A stretch of DNA of 64,000 nt from IMG/VR virus record IMGVR_UViG_3300028862_000012, positions 159,866 to 223,865 of that record, one strand, 5' to 3'. The notes below the pieces were generated by a model. It had not been told where the DNA came from. It searched no databases and saw only the letters and a list, made by a program, of their open reading frames with translations. Shown here one piece after another: positions 1 to 47,705 of this stretch; positions within the stretch are counted from its first letter, which is position 1, and each line of letters starts with the position of its first letter. The translations under genes and the position numbers were made by a program.

Positions 1-25
1 GACTTAAAGCTGGAATAAATATATT

Positions 26-259
26 ATGAATAATAAAAGAATTTCTACTTTTGTAGATAACGAGTGGTATGCTTTTTATAGGGATGTTGATAAAGATTAC
101 ATTTGTAATCAAAGTATACTTACTATACTAGAACTATTTTACAACTACCTAAATGACAAGTCAGAGTATTGTAAAAAGCTCATGGACTACTACAATTTAA
201 TTTCAGATAAATATAAAGCTGACTATTGGAAAGAAAGATACGAAAAGGAAATAAAATGA
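26..259 (+). CDS. Hypothetical protein; codons 5-11 overlap a Cas12a repeat handle
   Basis: ORF track, 77 aa; ATGA overlap with next ORF. Confidence 0.7.
   Translation: MNNKRISTFVDNEWYAFYRDVDKDYICNQSILTILELFYNYLNDKSEYCKKLMDYYNLISDKYKADYWKERYEKEIK
40..58 (+). repeat. Solitary Cas12a (type V-A) repeat handle AATTTCTACTTTTGTAGAT
   Basis: Matches the conserved 19-nt 3' end of V-A repeats (AATT-TCTAC-loop-GTAGA-T); identical to the copy at 45912-45930 (-). Confidence 0.75.
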
Positions 260-1150: not shown

Positions 1151-2049
1151 ATATAGAATTTTATGGAGTACGTGGTAGTTATTCTGTTCCCGGTTTATCT
1201 ACTGTAAAATATGGTGGTAATACAACTTGTGTTAGTATTTCTACAGTATATAATGATAAAATAATTCGTATTATTATAGATAGTGGAAACGGCATAATTC
1301 CTTTGGGCAAAAAAATGATTAATAATTATTTTGCTAAAAAAGAAAATCTTATAGCTACCCTTTTGTTTACTCACTTGCATCCAGATCATACACAAGGATT
1401 TCCTTTCTTTTCACCTAATTTCTTTTCAAACTGTGAACTACACTTAATGGGAATGAAAACTTTAAAAAAGAATATTGGAAATATCTTAGAACAAGATATG
1501 AACCAGCCTACATTTCCCATAGAATATAAAGATTTAAAATCAAAGAGATTTCATTATGAAGTAGTTGATGGACAAACTTTTTATATCGATATTACTGGAA
1601 AGCCCATAATGATAAAAAATGAGCAGGCCTTGTTTGAAGTAAAAATTATGCAGTCATATTCACCGTCCCATCCACAGCAGGGTGCAGATTATTATAGAAT
1701 AACTGAATTATTGTCTGGTAAAAGTGTAGCGTGTATATGGGATTTGGAGTCACACTATGGTGGTGATAAGCGCGTTATTTCTTTTGCAAAAGATTGTGAT
1801 ATAATGATTCATGATACACAATATACAGATGAAGAATATAATAATGATAAAATAGTTGTGCAAGGTTTTGGACATTCTACTTATTCAATGGCTATTGATA
1901 ATGCTACTCAAGCGAATGTAAAAAAATTAATTTGTATGCATTATAATCCAAACCATTCTGATGATACACTTGATAAAATTTCAGAATCATTAATTAGTAA
2001 AGATTTAGAAATAGTATTTTCAAAAGAAAATATGGAAATAGAAGTTTAA
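1147..2049 (+). CDS. MBL-fold metallo-hydrolase (RNase Z / cyclic-nucleotide phosphodiesterase-like)
   Basis: THLHPDH (HxHxDH), IDSG, IMIHD and GFGHS...MHYNP motifs. Confidence 0.9.
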   Translation: MNIEFYGVRGSYSVPGLSTVKYGGNTTCVSISTVYNDKIIRIIIDSGNGIIPLGKKMINNYFAKKENLIATLLFTHLHPDHTQGFPFFSPNFFSNCELHLMGMKTLKKNIGNILEQDMNQPTFPIEYKDLKSKRFHYEVVDGQTFYIDITGKPIMIKNEQALFEVKIMQSYSPSHPQQGADYYRITELLSGKSVACIWDLESHYGGDKRVISFAKDCDIMIHDTQYTDEEYNNDKIVVQGFGHSTYSMAIDNATQANVKKLICMHYNPNHSDDTLDKISESLISKDLEIVFSKENMEIEV

Positions 2050-2059
2050 GGAGTAAAGC

Positions 2060-2335
2060 ATGGGAATGGATAAAGATTGTGAGAAAGCAGAAGGATCAAT
2101 ATCTTTATTGTTAAAAGATATTTTTAGTGCATTGAAAGAATCAGACGCGATTATTAGTAATAGCTATGATAGGTTTCATGATGTAATAAAGAATGTTCCT
2201 GATACAGAGGCACCTAATGAAGAAAAAAGGCTGGAGAAAGAATCATATTTAGCTGAAAGTCTTTATAAAATCAAAGAAGAAATAGTTAGAATAAATAATT
2301 GTTATATTGATTTTAATTCAAAATGTGATTTGTAA
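2060..2335 (+). CDS. Hypothetical protein
   Basis: ORF with AGGAG RBS. Confidence 0.7.
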   Translation: MGMDKDCEKAEGSISLLLKDIFSALKESDAIISNSYDRFHDVIKNVPDTEAPNEEKRLEKESYLAESLYKIKEEIVRINNCYIDFNSKCDL

Positions 2336-2349
2336 ATTAAGGTGCTATT

Positions 2350-2670
2350 ATGGATTTTTCAGCATTAGACACAGAGCAGAAGGAAAAGCTTGATACTACA
2401 CTACAGGCTTTTTATGAGTACAAAGTACTTGCACGAGACAACACAGCAAGTGCAAATGAATTGATTAGTAATCTTATTGATGATTTTATTCCAAAGATTG
2501 AAAAAGGCACTAAAGCAAGTAGAGCAGATAAGGAAAATAATAAGCAGGAGCGAAAGGAAGCAAAGCAGACTATTGGCGATATCGTTCGTGAATTCATGCG
2601 CGAAAAGGATAGTAAGCCCGATACTACTCCTGAAGCTAGACAGGCTTATGAAAATTTGAAAAATAAGTAA
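2350..2670 (+). CDS. Hypothetical protein
   Basis: ORF track; phage-like spacing. Confidence 0.7.
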   Translation: MDFSALDTEQKEKLDTTLQAFYEYKVLARDNTASANELISNLIDDFIPKIEKGTKASRADKENNKQERKEAKQTIGDIVREFMREKDSKPDTTPEARQAYENLKNK

Positions 2671-2737
2671 AACAGTGTATGTAAAAATATCTATGTAAAA
2701 AAGTTTTTATTCAGAATATGTTTTATAAGGAGTTTAT

Positions 2738-3175
2738 ATGAAAACGGAAAATGAGATTAAGCGTGGGATTAAAACAACTATTAATCCAATGATGAGAAAG
2801 CTTTCTGAAAGTTTTTATTCTGGAAGTAGTCAATTGAAGTGTAAGGAACTTTATGATGTAGTTAAGTCACAGCTTAAAGCTTCTGATTTTATTAGTCAGC
2901 AGAACATTATTGAATATAAAGGGTATAAGCTTAAAGTTCGTTTTGCAGGTCAGAAGAATTGGTGATTTTCTCAGGTCTATGATGGGAACTTTTATGACTA
3001 TGATCTTTATATTCGATTCTTTAATAATGAAGATAAAGGTGTATATCTGATTAATAAGGACTATTTTAAATCATTAAAGGGAAGCAAGGCTCATGCACCT
3101 TGTAAAACTATAAAATCTTTTAATCCATCAAAAAGTGATAGAGAAGATATTGTAACTATGTATAAGGTATGTTAA
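2738..3175 (+). pseudogene. Putative endonuclease-like partner of the methyltransferase, interrupted by in-frame TGA at 2963-2965
   Basis: Frame continues FSQVYDGNFYDYDLYIRF...MYKVC to TAA 3173-3175, directly upstream of the MTase; nuclease function is inferred from position. Confidence 0.5.
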
Positions 3176-3188
3176 TATAGGAGACATT

Positions 3189-3971
3189 ATGATAGCGGAT
3201 AAGTTTTACACTGATCCGCTTTTAGCAAAGCATTTAATAGAAGTAACTAATTCAAAAATAGATTTTAGTAAGTTTGATGTTCTTCTTGAGCCTTCTGCTG
3301 GAAGTGGTAGTTTTTATTTTAATTTAGATAAATCTAAGCGTTTAGGATTAGACTTGTATCCTGATGCAAATGAAATACTTGAGCAAGATTTTTTTACTTT
3401 TAAGTATGATAGTAATAAAAAATATATAACAATTGGTAATCCTCCCTTTGGAAGAGTAAGCTCTATGGCTGTAAAGTTTTTTAATACAGCAAGTAATTTT
3501 TCAGAGTATATATGTTTTATAGTACCTCGTACTTTTAAACGAGTGTCAGTACAGAATAGATTAAACTTAAACTTTCATTTAATCTATGAAGAAAATATTC
3601 CTGCTAATAGTTTTACCCCTTCTATGAATGTAAAGTGTGTGTATCAAATATGGGAACATAGAAAGCAAAAAAGAAACATAGTCATTCTACCAAGTTTTAC
3701 TAATGATTTTAAATTTGTTTCTATAGCTAATAAGGATAATGCTGACTTTGCTATGTTGGCTTATGGGGGAAAATGTGGAAGAATAGAAAGAGTTATTCCT
3801 ACTACCGGCTTGCGTAGTTGGCATTTTATAAAAGTAATTAATGATAAAAATGTAGAAGAAATCATAGCAAGACTGAATAGCTTAGATTATTCCATTTGTG
3901 AAGATACAGCGCGACAAAACAGTATTGGGATGAAAGAAGTTTGTGAATTATATAATAATAAATATACATAA
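3189..3971 (+). CDS. SAM-dependent DNA amino-methyltransferase
   Basis: Motif I EPSAGSGSF, motif IV GNPPFG, N-terminal DKFYT. Confidence 0.9.
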   Translation: MIADKFYTDPLLAKHLIEVTNSKIDFSKFDVLLEPSAGSGSFYFNLDKSKRLGLDLYPDANEILEQDFFTFKYDSNKKYITIGNPPFGRVSSMAVKFFNTASNFSEYICFIVPRTFKRVSVQNRLNLNFHLIYEENIPANSFTPSMNVKCVYQIWEHRKQKRNIVILPSFTNDFKFVSIANKDNADFAMLAYGGKCGRIERVIPTTGLRSWHFIKVINDKNVEEIIARLNSLDYSICEDTARQNSIGMKEVCELYNNKYT

Positions 3972-3983
3972 TAAAAAAGTTTA

Positions 3984-3992
3984 TAACTATTA
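3984..3992 (+). promoter_or_regulatory. TAACTATT motif upstream of the tmRNA-like gene
   Basis: Recurring intergenic motif; the 8-mer ends 8 nt before G1 of the RNA. Confidence 0.5.
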
Positions 3993-3999
3993 GTTAGTA

Positions 4000-4104
4000 G
4001 GGGTATATTTGGTTATCGATTTAGTGGTTGATTGAAGCGACGAAAGGCCCATATTACGAAAGCTTAGACTGCTAAAGACCGGAGTTCAAATCTCCGATGC
4101 TCCA
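4000..4104 (+). ncRNA. Miniature tmRNA-like RNA (tRNA-like domain only; Ala identity; CCA not encoded)
   Basis: Acceptor GGGGTAT/ATGCTCC-A with G3:U70 and A73; T-arm CGGAG-TTCAAAT-CTCCG; stemless tmRNA-type D-loop ATTTGGTTATCGA; helix 4021-4029/4067-4075; GAC linker; only ~37 nt inside. Confidence 0.8.
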
Positions 4105-4126
4105 ATAAAGTATAAAAGGAATAGTT

Positions 4127-4807
4127 ATGATTTTACAAGAAAAAGAGTTTGAAATTACAAACAAAGATTTACAAGAAAGTTTTCCAGAATTATATGAAAA
4201 ATATAAAGAAACCTTTGGTAGTAAGCGCCCTGATATAAGCGTAGAGATACAGGATGAATATAACTTTCATGTTTCTGTAACTGATTGGCAATCTGATTAC
4301 TGGAATCCAGTTATTTATTTCTTTTTGCATGATGGTAAAGTTGCTTATTTTGATGCAGGAGTAGATGGTGGAAAGGGTAATTTTCCTTTTGGAAAGTATA
4401 AATTAGGTGATTCAGATGCAATATTAGAATGTTATACTAAAAGTTTTAATCGTTGTAATCTAATAGTAAATAGTCATTTTATAAATAAACAAGCATTACC
4501 CGTATCAGAAGATTTAGACTTTGCAGAAGAGTATGTTTTGTGTTTAATGCATATGTATAAAGCAGCATTTAGACGTAAGAACTTTTTAAGCTATATTTAT
4601 GATGGTAATTATACTGTAGATAATTGGAAACGTCCTATTAAGGAAGTGAAAAAAGCTGTGTTACAGTATGGAAACTACAAAGATGAAGCCTATGATGCAA
4701 TATTACTTTCGTTGCAGATGAAAGATTTAGTTGTAATAAATAGTGCAGGAAGTTCAAGACTTACAAATAAAGGAACAAATATAGCTATTCAATTGAACGG
4801 AAGATAA
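4127..4807 (+). CDS. Hypothetical protein
   Basis: 226-aa ORF. Confidence 0.75.
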   Translation: MILQEKEFEITNKDLQESFPELYEKYKETFGSKRPDISVEIQDEYNFHVSVTDWQSDYWNPVIYFFLHDGKVAYFDAGVDGGKGNFPFGKYKLGDSDAILECYTKSFNRCNLIVNSHFINKQALPVSEDLDFAEEYVLCLMHMYKAAFRRKNFLSYIYDGNYTVDNWKRPIKEVKKAVLQYGNYKDEAYDAILLSLQMKDLVVINSAGSSRLTNKGTNIAIQLNGR

Positions 4808-4836
4808 ATATTTATACTCATATTTTTAATCCCTTA

Positions 4837-4848
4837 TAACTATTATAG
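4837..4848 (+). promoter_or_regulatory. TAACTATTATAG motif (putative phage late promoter)
   Basis: Intergenic, upstream of the operon leading to the tail fibre. Confidence 0.55.
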
Positions 4849-4882
4849 TGACACATTATAATTTATAAGGGATATTTATTTT

Positions 4883-5629
4883 ATGGACTTAGACTTTTTA
4901 AAAACTCCGTGGGGATTTGGTAGTGTAACAGTAGTAACAGCAGGACTTTGTTTTATTTTATATCGTGTTGGTTATATAGCTTTTGGAAAGTTTCAAGCAG
5001 GTAGAAAAGAAAAAGAAAAAGAAATATCTCCTCATGCTAGTTGCCCTCATTCAAAGGACATTATGGATATTATACATCGAACGGCAGATCATTATGAAAA
5101 AGTCCAGAACTTAAAATCCTCTATAATTAAAGAGCAAATGAGATACTATGAAGAGATTGAAGAAGAAGTATTAGGACATTTAAAACATATCTTTACAAAA
5201 TTAATATCAAATAAATTATCTAATAATGAGCAGTTTATTACTCATTCTGATTATGGCTACTATATGCTTATTTTAAAAGTTATATTTTCTGATTTAAAAT
5301 CCTATGTTAGAAACTTGTTTTTAGTTAATCATTATATAACCTATTCAATAGAAGATCAGCAAGATTATATTGAAAAGAAAAAAACTATTATAGTACAGAA
5401 AATATCAGAATCCATAAATGACTATTGGCGTGGATCATTAATAACATGCACTGAAATTTATGAAAAAAATAAAGAACAATTATCTTTTTTTGAAAGTCAA
5501 ATAAAAGATGTTTTTAATCGAGCATTCTTTACTGCTCGTGAAGTTAATACTGCAATAATTAAAATGGAAGAAAGTTATCAGAATTATATAGATTCTATAG
5601 TTGGAGTTTCTGATGAGAATAAGGAGTAA
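4883..5629 (+). CDS. Membrane-anchored hypothetical protein
   Basis: N-terminal hydrophobic segment GSVTVVTAGLCFILYRVGYIAF. Confidence 0.65.
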   Translation: MDLDFLKTPWGFGSVTVVTAGLCFILYRVGYIAFGKFQAGRKEKEKEISPHASCPHSKDIMDIIHRTADHYEKVQNLKSSIIKEQMRYYEEIEEEVLGHLKHIFTKLISNKLSNNEQFITHSDYGYYMLILKVIFSDLKSYVRNLFLVNHYITYSIEDQQDYIEKKKTIIVQKISESINDYWRGSLITCTEIYEKNKEQLSFFESQIKDVFNRAFFTAREVNTAIIKMEESYQNYIDSIVGVSDENKE

Positions 5630-36059: not shown

Positions 36060-36665
36060 CTAAAGATGATACAGATCAGTCATGCAAGCCCAATAGTTTT
36101 CTGCTATTTTATGTGATTGCATAGCTTTATAGCCATCAGTATTATTAGCTATATGATGCTCCGCTATATAACTAAACTTAACCTTTTGATTTTGATTGGC
36201 ACTAATCAATTGTGAGTAGGCTATTTCGACATCTTTAGGCTTAAAGCTGTATAGATCATTATGGCTTTTGAAGCGCATGTCTTCTTTTCCGTTCTTGCAT
36301 AAGAATAGTCCAAAGCCAGCTTCATCCTTAAATAAAACAGACTCTTGATCAAACTTTTTTCCTAAATATAGGATATCTCCAAAATCTATATTAGGAATAA
36401 AAAAGCTTTTTTCTTCCCGTATTCCTAATTCACCAGTATCTATATCTTTATAACTATATCCTGAACGCTGTTCAATGTAGCCATAGTGAAGACCTCTGAT
36501 AGTTTTTCGTAATTCTTCATGCCTTTCTAGGTTTTGTTCTTCTGAAAAAAGATCCTGTCTATATGCAGAAACTACTCCAAAGGTAGTATTGGGATTATTT
36601 ATGTGTTGCCAGACTCGGCTTAAACTTGATTCTATTAATCGGATGTTTCCTTCATTGATGCTCAT
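36060..36665 (-). CDS. Hypothetical phage protein
   Basis: 201 aa; TAACTATT motif and GGAG RBS upstream. Confidence 0.7.
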   Translation of the reverse strand: MSINEGNIRLIESSLSRVWQHINNPNTTFGVVSAYRQDLFSEEQNLERHEELRKTIRGLHYGYIEQRSGYSYKDIDTGELGIREEKSFFIPNIDFGDILYLGKKFDQESVLFKDEAGFGLFLCKNGKEDMRFKSHNDLYSFKPKDVEIAYSQLISANQNQKVKFSYIAEHHIANNTDGYKAMQSHKIAENYWACMTDLYHL

Positions 36666-45070: not shown

Positions 45071-45847
45071 CTATTTTCCACCATTAATTTTTTCATCCAA
45101 TTGCTGAACCTGAATAGTAAGTACTTCAATCTTATGAATCAGCTTATTTTTCTTTTCCTCAAGTTCTTCTATTTCCTCAAGCTCTTCCATTGGTTCTTTA
45201 ATAATCTGTTTTACCTGATCAATAGTTTTTCCTTGCTGAAGCAAAATAAGTGCCTTTTGTGCTTTATCCAGATCAGAAGTAAGTGCTACAAAAGTTTTAG
45301 CATCAGAACTAATATCATTAGGAATACCCCGAGTAGCAATCTTAACAGTCTTTTTTACTGTTGTTCGCTTAATTCCAATAGTACGATCTGTAATATCTTC
45401 ATATCGTACATTTTCTTCTTTGCAGATAGTCTGTACTTCAATCAGTGCTGTACCCATTTCAGAAGTAAGCTTACTAATTTGTACATCCAGTTCTTTTACC
45501 TTATCAATTTTAGCTTTCAAGTTGTCAGAGATAACTACAGTGTAAAATCCGAGTTTTTCGGCTTTAGTAATTAGATCATAAAAGGTAGACCAAAAGAAAC
45601 TGGTATGTCCTTCCTTACGATTATTTTCTGCATACACTACATGATGAGCTAGTTCATGCAGTGCTGTAAAAAAGAGCAGATTATTGTCATCATTGAAATT
45701 TCGGTTATTTAATAGTATTTCTTTTGTTGCAGGTAAATATTTACCATTTACATTTTTAGATTTCTTTCCAGTAAAAATACAAGTATATTCATTTACGCAA
45801 TGATATACCTTATCCAGATTTTCTTTAACATCATTTTGATTCCACAT
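45071..45847 (-). CDS. SprT-like zinc metalloprotease with C-terminal coiled coil
   Basis: NGKY, TALHELAHH (HExxH), GHTSFFW. Confidence 0.75.
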   Translation of the reverse strand: MWNQNDVKENLDKVYHCVNEYTCIFTGKKSKNVNGKYLPATKEILLNNRNFNDDNNLLFFTALHELAHHVVYAENNRKEGHTSFFWSTFYDLITKAEKLGFYTVVISDNLKAKIDKVKELDVQISKLTSEMGTALIEVQTICKEENVRYEDITDRTIGIKRTTVKKTVKIATRGIPNDISSDAKTFVALTSDLDKAQKALILLQQGKTIDQVKQIIKEPMEELEEIEELEEKKNKLIHKIEVLTIQVQQLDEKINGGK

Positions 45848-45859
45848 ATAACATCCTTT

Positions 45860-45946
45860 ATCTACATAAGTAGAAATTTTAATTTTCTAAATACTCGCAA
45901 GAAATCAATTCATCTACAAAAGTAGAAATTTAAAACCTTCTAAAAT
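45860..45946 (-). CRISPR. Two-repeat Cas12a-type (V-A) mini-array / crRNA mimic
   Basis: Repeats ATTTTAGAAGGTTTTAAATTTCTACTTTTGTAGAT (45946-45912) and GTATTTAGAAAATTAAAATTTCTACTTATGTAGAT (45894-45860), 35 nt each, separated by a 17-nt spacer; no cas12a in window. Confidence 0.8.
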
Positions 45947-45969
45947 ATTTCTTTATAAGAAATTTACTA

Positions 45970-45998
45970 ACAGTATAACAAAATAAATTATAAGTCAA
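45970..45998 (-). promoter_or_regulatory. Promoter of the mini-array / SprT unit
   Basis: TTGACT-17-TACTGT (overlapping extended TG-n-TATACT). Confidence 0.65.
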
Positions 45999-46005
45999 TA
46001 ACTAA

Positions 46006-46035
46006 ATGCGGAGAATATAAAGCTAATCTCCGCAT
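46006..46035 (-). terminator. Intrinsic terminator insulating the mini-array unit
   Basis: ATGCGGAGA / TCTCCGCAT stem, U-rich tail on the - strand, right after the 46037 stop. Confidence 0.7.
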
Positions 46036-46430: not shown

Positions 46431-47705
46431 TTACATAAACTCCTTTTCCATACGATGTTCTAAGCTATCAAAAGTAGATGATTTTAATATATTAATTGCT
46501 TTTTCTTTACTTGTATACAGGTTATTTAATTGATTCATGTACAGTGTATTTAATATATTTTTAAACTCTGGACAAGGTTTATAACCAAGTTCTATTAAAG
46601 TATCACCGGTAATAAAAGGAGCAGGAAGGTTAGTATAATTACTGGCAATTTGCTTATTGAAATTATACAAGCTTATATCATAAATAAACTTTTCATTATC
46701 AGAAATCATTACATCACAGACAATAAGCATATCATCAAAAAAATTAGATGCTTTTAAAGTTCGGGTTGTGGCTAAATCAATATGACTATATAATTTTTTA
46801 TAATTACTAATTATATTACAAATGTATTCTATGTCATCATTACTAAATCGTAAAGTACTTAACTCTTCTTTTACTATATCTGTATCCATATTGATAAACA
46901 TCAAACTCAAATATACTTTGTAATTTACTTTATATTTATCAGCACGGAGCAGTCTATCGATCAACAGATTAAGTGTATAGGCATCAGTTACTTCATGCTT
47001 ATACAAGGCAGGGTATATAACATTACATAAATCTTTATAGCCAGTCAATACTTTCATAAAATCACCTACCTTTGACATCAATATTTTTTCAGTAAGTTCT
47101 TTACTGATTCTATCTTTGGCAACATGATTATTAAATTCTGACGAAAAGCTATTTATAAAATCAGGTGAGTAATTAGAGATATATCCATGTACTTGGAAGC
47201 GAATAAAACGCAATAGTCTAAGATAATCTTCTTTAATACGCTCTTCTGGATTTCCTACAAATCGCAATACTTTATTTTCTATATCGCGAACTCCATTAAC
47301 ATAGTCATAGTACTGATTAGTTATAGGATTATAAAACAAGGCATTAATAGTAAAGTCTCGACGCTGTGCATCTTCTTCTATTGAAGCTAATTCCATATGA
47401 TCAAAATGGCGACCGTCACAACCGATTTCTTTTCTAAAACAAGCCAGCTCGAAAGTAAAGTTATTCTTTGATACTAATAGTACTTCAAATGATTTACCTA
47501 CAGATTTACCTACAGATTTCACTATATAGCCGTAATGAGCAAGGATTGGAATACTAATATTAGTTAAGCAATCTGTTGCTATATCTATGTCATTACATGG
47601 TTTATTAGCCAAGGTATCCCGAACATAGCCGCCTGCAAAAACAGCTATATGATTTTCTGATTGGAGGCATTTACATATATCAATAGCTGTTTCTAATTCT
47701 GTCAT
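46431..47705 (-). CDS. cca: CCA-adding tRNA nucleotidyltransferase (class II)
   Basis: AGGYVRD, DIDIAT, RRDFTINAL, EDYLRLLRFIRF; poly(A) polymerase not excluded. Confidence 0.85.
   Translation of the reverse strand: MTELETAIDICKCLQSENHIAVFAGGYVRDTLANKPCNDIDIATDCLTNISIPILAHYGYIVKSVGKSVGKSFEVLLVSKNNFTFELACFRKEIGCDGRHFDHMELASIEEDAQRRDFTINALFYNPITNQYYDYVNGVRDIENKVLRFVGNPEERIKEDYLRLLRFIRFQVHGYISNYSPDFINSFSSEFNNHVAKDRISKELTEKILMSKVGDFMKVLTGYKDLCNVIYPALYKHEVTDAYTLNLLIDRLLRADKYKVNYKVYLSLMFINMDTDIVKEELSTLRFSNDDIEYICNIISNYKKLYSHIDLATTRTLKASNFFDDMLIVCDVMISDNEKFIYDISLYNFNKQIASNYTNLPAPFITGDTLIELGYKPCPEFKNILNTLYMNQLNNLYTSKEKAINILKSSTFDSLEHRMEKEFM

What the first reader, a model, noticed from the sequence alone, without database searches (positions are those of the whole stretch)
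45071..46035. Stand-alone Cas12a-type mini-array fused to the leader of an SprT-like protease gene
Seen on -: terminator, promoter, 35-nt repeat, 17-nt spacer (GAATTGATTTCTTGCGA), second 35-nt repeat, then directly the RBS and ATG of the SprT-like gene (AAAGGATGTTATATG). Both repeats keep AATTTCTACT-x-x-GTAGAT with the stem intact and differ in the loop and 5' part; no cas12a is present. Known: this handle is the V-A processing/loading signal; phage solitary repeats can act as RNA anti-CRISPRs (Racr) and viral mini-arrays can borrow host Cas. Inference: an RNA decoy or hijacking guide for host Cas12a. Processing would also place the protease RBS inside the second crRNA, so translation could report whether the host has Cas12a, making it a CRISPR-sensing switch.
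Basis: partly seen in the sequence, partly recalled or inferred. Interest (0 to 1): 0.9.

Follow-up and report, generated by a model that had tools for sequence, protein, structure and literature searches.

The report
Phage-borne Cas12a repeat mini-array
An uncultured giant phage carries three perfect copies of the RNA handle that the bacterial CRISPR enzyme Cas12a recognises, with no cas12a gene in the 61% of its genome examined; they are most likely RNA decoys against host CRISPR immunity, a kind of element described since 2023.

Summary
On the minus strand, a promoter-like site is followed by a 36-nt V-A repeat, a 17-nt spacer-like segment, a 35-nt repeat, and then directly AAAGGA-N6-ATG of a 258-aa HExxH protein. 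Both 19-nt Cas12a handles are exact. A third exact handle lies at window 40-58, just behind its own promoter-like site. Shuffled sequence gives none.

The window is the last 64 kb of a 224-kb IMG/VR phage contig. In the 136 kb I could read there is no Cas12a-sized gene, no regular array and no further handle.

The 17-nt segment has no PAM-flanked target in IMG/VR. No host CreR twin and no host were found.

Homologues of the protease-like gene, including one in a true relative of this phage, lack the mini-array, so the fusion is not conserved.

Best reading: a phage RNA mimic of Cas12a crRNA, of the Racr/Cracr class, that loads host Cas12a with harmless guides. This makes it a new member of a known kind.

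One new point: in IMG/VR, V-A handles upstream of genes tend to abut the ribosome-binding site directly. There are 8 independent families, p about 0.002-0.005 against a uniform null.

The parts
46008..46033 (-). Hairpin after the stop of the upstream 73-aa ORF. Stem GCGGAGA/TCTCCGC (7 bp), 12-nt loop, then ATTTAGTTATT. Terminator-like only.
   Evidence: Read. Not called by the terminator scan.
45972..45998 (-). Promoter-like site: TTGACT, 15 nt, TATACT, with TG before the -10 (extended -10 type). The implied start is near 45965.
   Evidence: Read. The 15-nt spacing falls outside the scanner's 16-18 nt range, so it was not called.
45912..45947 (-). Repeat 1 (36 nt). The 5' part is TATTTTAGAAGGTTTTA. 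It is followed by an exact Cas12a handle, AATTTCTACTTTTGTAGAT (45930-45912).
45895..45911 (-). Spacer-like segment psiS1, GAATTGATTTCTTGCGA (17 nt).
   Evidence: It is unique in the window even with 3 mismatches allowed. No PAM-flanked match in IMG/VR. No host CreR-type twin in JGI metagenomes.
45860..45894 (-). Repeat 2 (35 nt). The 5' part is GTATTTAGAAAATTAA. It is followed by an exact Cas12a handle, AATTTCTACTTATGTAGAT (45878-45860).
45845..45859 (-). SD AAAGGA (guide positions 1-6 after handle 2), a 6-nt gap, then ATG (positions 13-15).
   Evidence: The same abutting geometry occurs in seven other independent viral families.
45071..45847 (-). 258-aa protein with an N-terminal small HExxH zincin metallopeptidase domain and a long helical C-terminal part. 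H64, E65, H68, H69 and H81 are invariant in the family.
   Evidence: AlphaFold2 model pLDDT 89.6. The top Foldseek matches are jannalysin, abylysin, selecase and Wss1.
1..58 (+). Second unit. A promoter-like TTGACT-17 nt-TATTAT begins 2 nt before the window and ends at window 27. A solitary exact handle, AATTTCTACTTTTGTAGAT, lies at 40-58. It overlaps codons 5-11 of a 77-aa ORFan (26-256).
   Evidence: This is the best promoter-like site of its region, 10/12. The ORFan has no homologues.

Best explanation
The mini-array is a phage-encoded mimic of Cas12a crRNA, of the Racr/Cracr class of RNA anti-CRISPRs.

Shown:
- There are two full-length V-A repeats with perfect handles and a solitary third handle.
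- Each unit lies a few to about 35 nt behind a promoter-like site, at the head of a run of phage genes.
- No cas12a, no regular array and no detectable DNA target were found.

Inferred:
- The transcript starts near 45965.
- Host Cas12a binds each handle and cuts just 5' of it.
- This would yield a crRNA-like RNA with a 17-nt guide plus repeat-derived 3' bases. My recollection is that this is too short for efficient DNA cleavage.
- It would yield a second RNA whose 'guide' is the phage's own SD/AUG region. That region is not self-targeted, because the preceding bases are AGAT and not TTTV.
- Cas12a loaded with these RNAs is unavailable for host crRNAs that target the phage, so CRISPR interference is weakened early in infection.
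- The downstream zincin protease-like gene is simply co-transcribed. Known acr-racr operons are co-transcribed in the same way.
For: Handles and context:
- Three exact handles against 0 in shuffles.
- The handles are identical apart from one loop base, while the 5' repeat parts have diverged. Psi-repeats of CreR/Cracr show the same pattern.
- The period is 52 nt, against 61-66 nt in real arrays.
- No Cas12a-sized gene and no further handle occur in 136 kb of the contig.
- No regularly spaced pair of these handles occurs in any IMG/VR contig, so none in this 224-kb contig.
- Promoter-like sites lie directly upstream of both units. Viral solitary repeats are described the same way.

Precedents:
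- More than 116 viral contigs carry solitary V-A handles.
- Six other viral contigs, representing four distinct sequences, carry compact promoter-handle-short spacer-handle units.
- RacrVA1-3 and CracrVA1 were validated experimentally.

Surroundings:
- The phage carries other counter-defence-type genes: a SAM lyase, and NAPRTase, ART-PolyVal and an RNA-repair module.
Against: - The host is unknown, so it is not shown that the host has a V-A system.
- None of 1,092 V-A spacers matches the phage.
- Promoter and terminator rest on reading by eye.
- The RNA is not notably structured on its own (z = -1.6).
- The element exists in one phage lineage only, seen 100% identical in three samples. There is therefore no evolutionary evidence of selection.
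- 88 kb of the contig is unseen.
Confidence: 0.55

Rival explanations
1. Cracr-type regulator. psiS1 (or another of the three guides) pairs through about 9-10 PAM-proximal bases with the host's cas12a promoter, or with a promoter repressed through CRISPR. Host Cas12a would then be redirected to silence its own expression without cutting.
For: - A degenerate two-repeat unit with a short psiS is the CreR/Cracr architecture.
- Viral Cracr psiS are characteristically short, 17-21 nt in type I-F.
- psiS1 contains a TTGATT, which resembles a -35 element.
- Bacterial solitary handles sit right upstream of putative cas12a in L148 and L217.
Against: - No handle followed by GAATTGAT occurs in a CreR-like context in JGI metagenomes.
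- The only 10-nt PAM-plus-seed hit in 2.1 Mb of fetched loci lies inside an ORF.
- The reported Cracr arrays are types I-C, I-E and I-F, not V-A.
- Because the host is unknown, the test is inconclusive rather than negative.
Confidence: 0.15
2. Cas12a-dependent switch. The SD and AUG lie in guide positions 1-15 of the second unit. Cas12a binding, or 3' trimming of the bound RNA, would block or destroy translation of the protease-like gene. Its output would then report whether active Cas12a is present.
For: - The geometry is exact.
- 19 independent viral families have a V-A handle within 30 nt of an SD-ATG that opens an ORF of 50 aa or more. In 8 of them the SD core lies 0-3 nt after GTAGAT. Binomial p = 0.0015, or 0.005 without this locus.
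- The third handle also lies at the very start of an ORF.
Against: - The junction is absent from the four homologues that were fetched, including the syntenic relative L128.
- The excess at gaps 0-3 is not significant against gaps 4-7 (p = 0.27), as expected from genome compaction alone.
- The downstream genes in the other families are unrelated: tail-fibre-like, structural or HTH-like.
- Repression of a phage gene by the very enzyme the phage needs to escape has no obvious benefit.
Confidence: 0.12
3. Non-functional relic: a fragment of a host or ancestral V-A array picked up by recombination at a module junction and now decaying.
For: - The unit sits at a junction that differs between relatives. 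In L128 a methyltransferase gene lies upstream instead.
- The 5' repeat parts are degenerate, and a 17-nt spacer is not a product of normal acquisition.
Against: - All three handles are perfect, with intact stems, at two separate loci. Both units lie just behind promoter-like sites.
- Decay would hit the handles as often as the 5' parts.
Confidence: 0.1
4. Hijacking guide: psiS1 directs host Cas12a to cut a competing phage or a host gene, as in viral mini-arrays used in inter-virus conflict.
For: Viral mini-arrays of this kind are known.
Against: - There are nine non-self exact 17-mer hits in IMG/VR. None is next to TTTV, and the number is at chance level.
- 17 nt is at or below the length needed for efficient Cas12a cleavage. 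This is my recollection of Zetsche et al. 2015 and was not checked here.
Confidence: 0.04
5. Accessory array of a phage-encoded Cas12a that lies in the unseen 88 kb of the contig.
For: Some huge phages encode CRISPR-Cas systems. 39% of the contig was not read.
Against: - No regular array with these handles occurs anywhere in the contig.
- No product longer than 833 aa is encoded in 136 kb.
- The only Cas12-related gene is a 401-aa TnpB, a family that uses its own omega-RNA, not this handle (from my own knowledge).
Confidence: 0.04

Closest known systems
RacrVA1-3, viral solitary-repeat RNA anti-CRISPRs (Camara-Wilpert et al. 2023, PMC10651486)
   Same: A V-A repeat in a phage with no cas genes, just downstream of a promoter. 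The proposed action is titration of the effector. It can be co-transcribed with a protein gene, as in the acr-racr operon.
   Different: Here two repeats flank a 17-nt segment. SRUFinder discards repeats that have a partial repeat within 100 bp and masks ORFs, so both units of this phage would be missed. No terminator follows, so the RNA continues into an mRNA whose SD begins at guide position 1.
CracrVA1 and Cracr arrays (Liu et al., bioRxiv 10.1101/2024.10.29.618823)
   Same: A viral crRNA-like RNA with a perfect 19-20-nt handle and a short, non-cleaving guide. Multiplexed array-like units are described.
   Different: CracrVA1 has a single psi-repeat, a 21-nt guide and a terminator, with a 10-nt match to a Ruminococcus cas12a promoter. 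Here no target could be found. The published arrays are I-C, I-E and I-F, not V-A.
Bacterial CreR of V-A systems (bioRxiv 10.1101/2023.03.10.532045)
   Same: A degenerate mini-CRISPR: a well-kept first repeat, a short psiS and a second repeat. It is bound by Cas12a for regulation, not for cleavage.
   Different: CreR lies next to cas12a and targets its promoter. Examples seen here are L148 and L217. This unit is in a phage with no cas12a in the 136 kb read, and both of its repeats keep a perfect handle.
Viral CRISPR mini-arrays for inter-virus conflict (reviewed in PMC11656645)
   Same: One or two spacers with host-type repeats in a virus that lacks cas genes.
   Different: Those spacers match related viruses and have normal length. 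This 17-mer has no such match.

Membership tests
Type V-A (Cas12a) CRISPR repeat | 3'-terminal 19-20 nt AAUUUCUAC-loop-GUAGAU with a 5-bp stem | tested here: met
   Three exact copies, 0 in shuffles. The same 19-mer forms arrays of up to 74 repeats in bacterial genomes.
Type V-A (Cas12a) CRISPR repeat | Full repeat of about 36 nt, repeated with spacers of about 26-30 nt, next to cas12a-cas4-cas1-cas2 | tested here: not met
   The repeats are 36 and 35 nt, but the spacer is 17 nt and the period is 52 nt. No cas12a-sized gene in 136 kb. No regular array in the contig.
Type V-A (Cas12a) CRISPR repeat | Bound and processed by Cas12a | not testable with these tools
   Needs an in vitro processing assay.
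Racr (RNA anti-CRISPR) | CRISPR repeat-like sequence on a mobile element, not associated with cas genes | tested here: met
   Phage contig. No cas12a in 61% of it.
Racr (RNA anti-CRISPR) | Solitary: no further repeat within 100 bp (SRUFinder rule) | tested here: not met
   The mini-array has two repeats 52 nt apart. The unit at window 40-58 is solitary.
Racr (RNA anti-CRISPR) | Promoter within 250 bp upstream | tested here: inconclusive
   Unit 2 has TTGACT-17-TATTAT, 10/12, the best site of its region. Unit 1 has TTGACT-15-TG-n-TATACT, read by eye and not called by the scanner.
Racr (RNA anti-CRISPR) | Host carries the matching CRISPR-Cas subtype, and the RNA inhibits it | not testable with these tools
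   The host was not identified.
Cracr (Cas-repressing RNA anti-CRISPR) | At least 9 PAM-proximal bases of psiS match a host cas or creT promoter, or a host CreR/CreA spacer | tested here: inconclusive
   No twin in JGI metagenomes. No convincing PAM-plus-seed site in the fetched loci. The host locus is unknown.
Viral mini-array for inter-virus conflict | Spacer matches a related virus next to a PAM | tested here: not met
   Exact 17-mer scan of IMG/VR.
SprT-like metalloprotease (Pfam PF10263) | Scores above the Pfam gathering threshold | tested here: not met
   19.2 bits against a cut-off of 25.6. Four of 8 family members match, with a best E-value of 1.5e-4, and none reaches the threshold.
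SprT-like metalloprotease (Pfam PF10263) | HExxH zinc site on a small zincin fold | tested here: met
   H64, E65, H68, H69 and H81 are invariant. In the model (pLDDT 89.6) the nearest structures are minigluzincins and Wss1, TM 0.41-0.59 on the target.

The most novel reading that the evidence does not exclude
A Cas12a handle placed flush against a ribosome-binding site is a recurrent viral device, seen in at least 8 independent families in IMG/VR. It would make translation, or mRNA integrity, of the downstream gene depend on whether free host Cas12a is present. A phage mRNA leader would then act as a sensor of the host's CRISPR effector and as a decoy at the same time.
Probability: 0.13. Interest if true: 0.8.

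Novelty: new member of a known kind. Interest (0 to 1): 0.45.

Why it matters
If it works as proposed, it adds a V-A, two-repeat, mRNA-leader-embedded example to the RNA anti-CRISPRs, from a 224-kb phage with no cultured relatives. It also shows that current finders would skip such units, because they require solitary, intergenic repeats.

Handles that abut the Shine-Dalgarno sequence are not mentioned in the two key papers I read. The idea can be tested cheaply with a reporter. If real, it would link CRISPR effector occupancy to phage gene expression.

Tried and rejected
- **Rfam.** No family matched at gathering threshold. Only chance miRNA and snoRNA hits appeared at E < 1.
- **Cultured relatives.** Megablast and tblastn against cultured phages found no close relatives. 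Terminase and clamp loader are 21-29% identical at best.
- **Relatives for comparison.** IMG/VR scans with the protease-like and CCA-adding proteins found only the same contig. The other copies (L133, L136) are 100% identical, so no covariation analysis was possible.
- **Host through the repeat.** They are mostly Patescibacteria, with some Gammaproteobacteria, Campylobacteraceae and Clostridia. None has a similar 5' repeat part, with the best at 9-11 of 18 bases.
- **Host through spacers.** 1,092 V-A spacers from those arrays were compared with 136 kb of the phage. Only 15-20-nt chance matches were found.
- **Target of psiS1, psiS2 and psiS3.** The L159 hit lies inside an ORF. The metagenome hits are palindromes without the AATT prefix, one ordinary array spacer and one coding-region coincidence. 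There is no self-site in 77 kb of the phage.
- **Shared promoter motif.** ATTGACTTA, common to both units, is not over-represented in the window.
- **Neighbouring ORFs.** Apart from the protease-like gene itself (only sub-threshold SprT-like and phrog_6361 hits), the 18 flanking ORFs have no Pfam or PHROG hits, so no known Acr was recognised.
- **Contig walk.** It stopped at position 88,002 because the last look-up failed on a start-codon mismatch.

Full report
**1. What is in the sequence**

On the minus strand the 73-aa ORF 46258-46037 ends and is followed by these features:
- a 7-bp hairpin (46033-46008);
- TTGACT (45998-45993), 15 nt, then TG-n-TATACT (45980-45972);
- a 36-nt repeat (45947-45912);
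- the 17-nt GAATTGATTTCTTGCGA (45911-45895);
- a 35-nt repeat (45894-45860);
- AAAGGA, 6 nt, then ATG (45859-45845), which opens a 258-aa ORF (45847-45071).

Both repeats end in the canonical Cas12a handle, AATTTCTAC-N4-GTAGAT. A pattern search finds three exact copies in the window and none in 100 shuffles. Two further hits with 2 mismatches break the stem and are at chance level.

The third copy, at 40-58 (+), was not in the finding.

The two repeats share TTTAGAA in their 5' parts with a 1-nt offset. Their handles differ only in one loop base.

The consensus scanner calls neither the promoter nor the hairpin, so those two features rest on reading by eye. On its own the RNA is not unusually stable (z = -1.6). 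Rfam has nothing for it.

**2. Where it is**

The window is the last 64 kb of IMGVR_UViG_3300028862_000012. This is a 223,865-bp, roughly 29% GC phage contig. It encodes:
- tail fibre, terminase and clamp loader;
- a CCA-adding enzyme;
- RecA;
- a SAM lyase.

Identical copies occur in a second IMG/VR contig and in a Logan assembly. Cultured phages are only 21-29% identical in terminase and clamp loader.

I walked the contig through its called genes back to position 88,002. The largest products in the walked stretch are 833, 743 and 742 aa. None is Cas12a-like, and there are no further handles.

A complete IMG/VR scan for two TTWT-loop handles at normal array spacing found nothing at all. The contig therefore holds no regular array with these handles.

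A 401-aa TnpB lies near contig position 144 kb. To my knowledge, that family uses its own omega-RNA, not this handle.

Positions 1-88,001 remain unread.

**3. The second unit**

The handle at 40-58 lies 12 nt downstream of TTGACT-17-TATTAT, the best promoter-like site of its region at 10/12. The ATG of the overlapping 77-aa ORFan sits inside that -10 element. The ORFan has no homologues.

The phage therefore has two promoter-proximal units, each at the head of a gene run and neither followed by a terminator.

**4. Tests of the alternatives**

*Target of the 17-mer.*
- It occurs nowhere else in the window, even with 3 mismatches allowed.
- IMG/VR has nine non-self exact hits. None is next to a repeat or a TTTV PAM, and the number is at chance level.
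- No PAM-plus-seed site for any of the three guides occurs in 77 kb of the phage.

*Host CreR twin.*
- A scan of JGI metagenomes for handle plus GAATTGAT gave 14 non-self hits.
- All were unrelated palindromes, an ordinary array spacer, or a coding-region coincidence.

*Host.*
- The handle is common in arrays of Patescibacteria and of some Gammaproteobacteria, Campylobacteraceae and Clostridia.
- None has a matching 5' repeat part.
- None of 1,092 spacers matches the phage.
- The host is therefore unknown, and the Cracr test is inconclusive.

*Conservation of the fusion.*
- The protease-like protein has seven relatives at 28-65% identity.
- The loci of four relatives (P0002, P0004, P0005, P0006) were fetched, and none has a handle upstream.
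- L128 is a syntenic relative of this phage. There the gene follows a methyltransferase gene by 10 nt.
- The mini-array is therefore a lineage-specific insertion at a variable junction.

**5. The protein**

H64, E65, H68, H69 and H81 are invariant in the family. Pfam SprT-like matches 4 of 8 members, all below threshold.

A confident model (pLDDT 89.6) resembles minigluzincins and Wss1 in its first ~100 residues. The rest is helical.

'Small zincin, SprT/Wss1-like' is a fair description. 'SprT family member' is not shown.

**6. Comparison with what is known**

- Viral solitary V-A repeats are common.
- RacrVA1-3 inhibit MbCas12a. SRUs are typically just downstream of a promoter, and an acr-racr pair is co-transcribed.
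- CracrVA1 is a viral handle plus a 21-nt guide that turns Ruminococcus Cas12a onto its own promoter. Viral guides tend to be short, and arrays of such RNAs exist for types I-C, I-E and I-F.
- Bacterial V-A CreR is a degenerate mini-CRISPR beside cas12a. I saw likely examples in L148 and L217.
- Six other viral contigs, representing four distinct sequences, carry compact promoter-handle-short spacer-handle units. One is a 440-kb contig with four handles.

The present unit therefore belongs to a described class.

SRUFinder's rules require solitary, intergenic repeats. Those rules explain why the contig is absent from the published table.

**7. The handle-to-SD junction**

- I ran a complete IMG/VR scan for a handle followed within 30 nt by GGA, 5-10 nt and ATG.
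- In 19 independent families that ATG opens an ORF of 50 aa or more.
- In 8 of the 19, the SD core lies 0-3 nt after GTAGAT.
- Against a uniform expectation, p = 0.0015, or 0.005 without this locus.
- The excess over gaps 4-7 is not significant (p = 0.27).
- The downstream genes are unrelated to one another.

The pattern is real. It can be explained either by coupling or by the tight packing of phage genomes.

Neither key paper mentions ribosome-binding sites or translation.

**8. Verdict**

The most likely function is an RNA decoy or mimic for host Cas12a (0.55). A Cracr-type regulator (0.15) and a Cas12a-dependent translational switch (0.12) are open alternatives and are not mutually exclusive. 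Relic, hijacking guide and accessory array of an unseen phage cas12a are less likely.

It is a new member of a known kind. Interest is moderate, raised somewhat by the recurrent handle-SD geometry.

Noticed in passing
window 1-58 (+); L134:13334-13393: A third exact Cas12a handle, 12 nt behind a TTGACT-17-TATTAT promoter-like site. It overlaps the start of a 77-aa ORFan whose ATG lies inside the -10 element.
   Followed up: yes
L061:2152, L087:2796, L095:890, L102:4342, L280, L282, L289, L298-L301, L304, L305: In other viral contigs a V-A handle ends 0-3 nt before the SD of a downstream gene (e.g. GTAGAT-GGAGGTAGAAC-ATG). There are seven independent families besides this one, and the downstream genes are unrelated to one another.
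   Followed up: partly
L272:4622-4673, L273:4628-4677, L274:4443-4507 (same sequence in L276 and L277), L275:581-639, L279:8726 and 8886: Compact viral V-A mini-arrays: a promoter, a bare handle, 21-35 nt, a second handle, and in L272 a terminator. One 440-kb contig carries four handles. Three of them have the same TTAT loop as repeat 2 here, and their guides all begin with AAAC.
   Followed up: partly
L148:774-843; L217 (minus strand, about 80 nt upstream of the 1245-aa ORF 1666-5400): Bacterial solitary V-A handles lie 50-60 nt upstream of a putative cas12a start, in a Rikenellaceae MAG and in Ruminococcoides intestinale. This is a CreR-like arrangement.
   Followed up: no
L310:7291-8496 (contig about 143.8-145.0 kb); L311:6195-6533: A 401-aa TnpB (HTH_OrfB_IS605, OrfB_IS605 and Cas12f1-like TNB domains) and a 112-aa fragment with the HTH part lie inside the phage genome.
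   Followed up: no
window 36060-36665 (-): An S-adenosylmethionine lyase family protein (Pfam 8.5e-08), an anti-restriction type of gene, lies in the same minus-strand gene run about 9 kb downstream of the mini-array.
   Followed up: no
L134:22-2253, L134:9336-10556, L310:1571-4072, L310:5474-6601, L311:7595-8578: The phage also encodes a 743-aa protein with an ART-PolyVal ADP-ribosyltransferase domain, NAPRTase, a PNKP-ligase-like 833-aa protein, a T4 Rnl1-like RNA ligase and a zeta-toxin-like kinase. This is a rich set of host-takeover and counter-defence-type genes.
   Followed up: no
L128:394-1945 versus L312:4708-5475: In the relative L128 the protease-like gene follows an N6_N4 methyltransferase gene by 10 nt. 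In this phage an N6_N4 methyltransferase of nearly the same length (255 vs 254 aa; homology to L128's not tested) lies about 85 kb away, which would suggest module shuffling.
   Followed up: partly
L147, L155, L211, L213, L214, L216, L221, L222, L243, L250: Many Bacillus species carry the same 19-mer once, in a conserved context (TTTAATACCAGTTTCAAG before it). The recurrence across species suggests a conserved, possibly coding, sequence rather than CRISPR; ORF context was not checked. A single copy of the handle is therefore not proof of CRISPR origin.
   Followed up: no
window 45947-45963 (-): A 7-bp AU-rich hairpin (AUUUCUU-AUA-AAGAAAU) lies between the presumed transcription start and repeat 1. 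Its last base overlaps the first base of repeat 1.
   Followed up: no
window 46431-47705 (-): A phage-encoded tRNA nucleotidyltransferase (CCA-adding enzyme; PolyA_pol head domain, 2.3e-26) lies just upstream, although no tRNA genes occur in the window.
   Followed up: no
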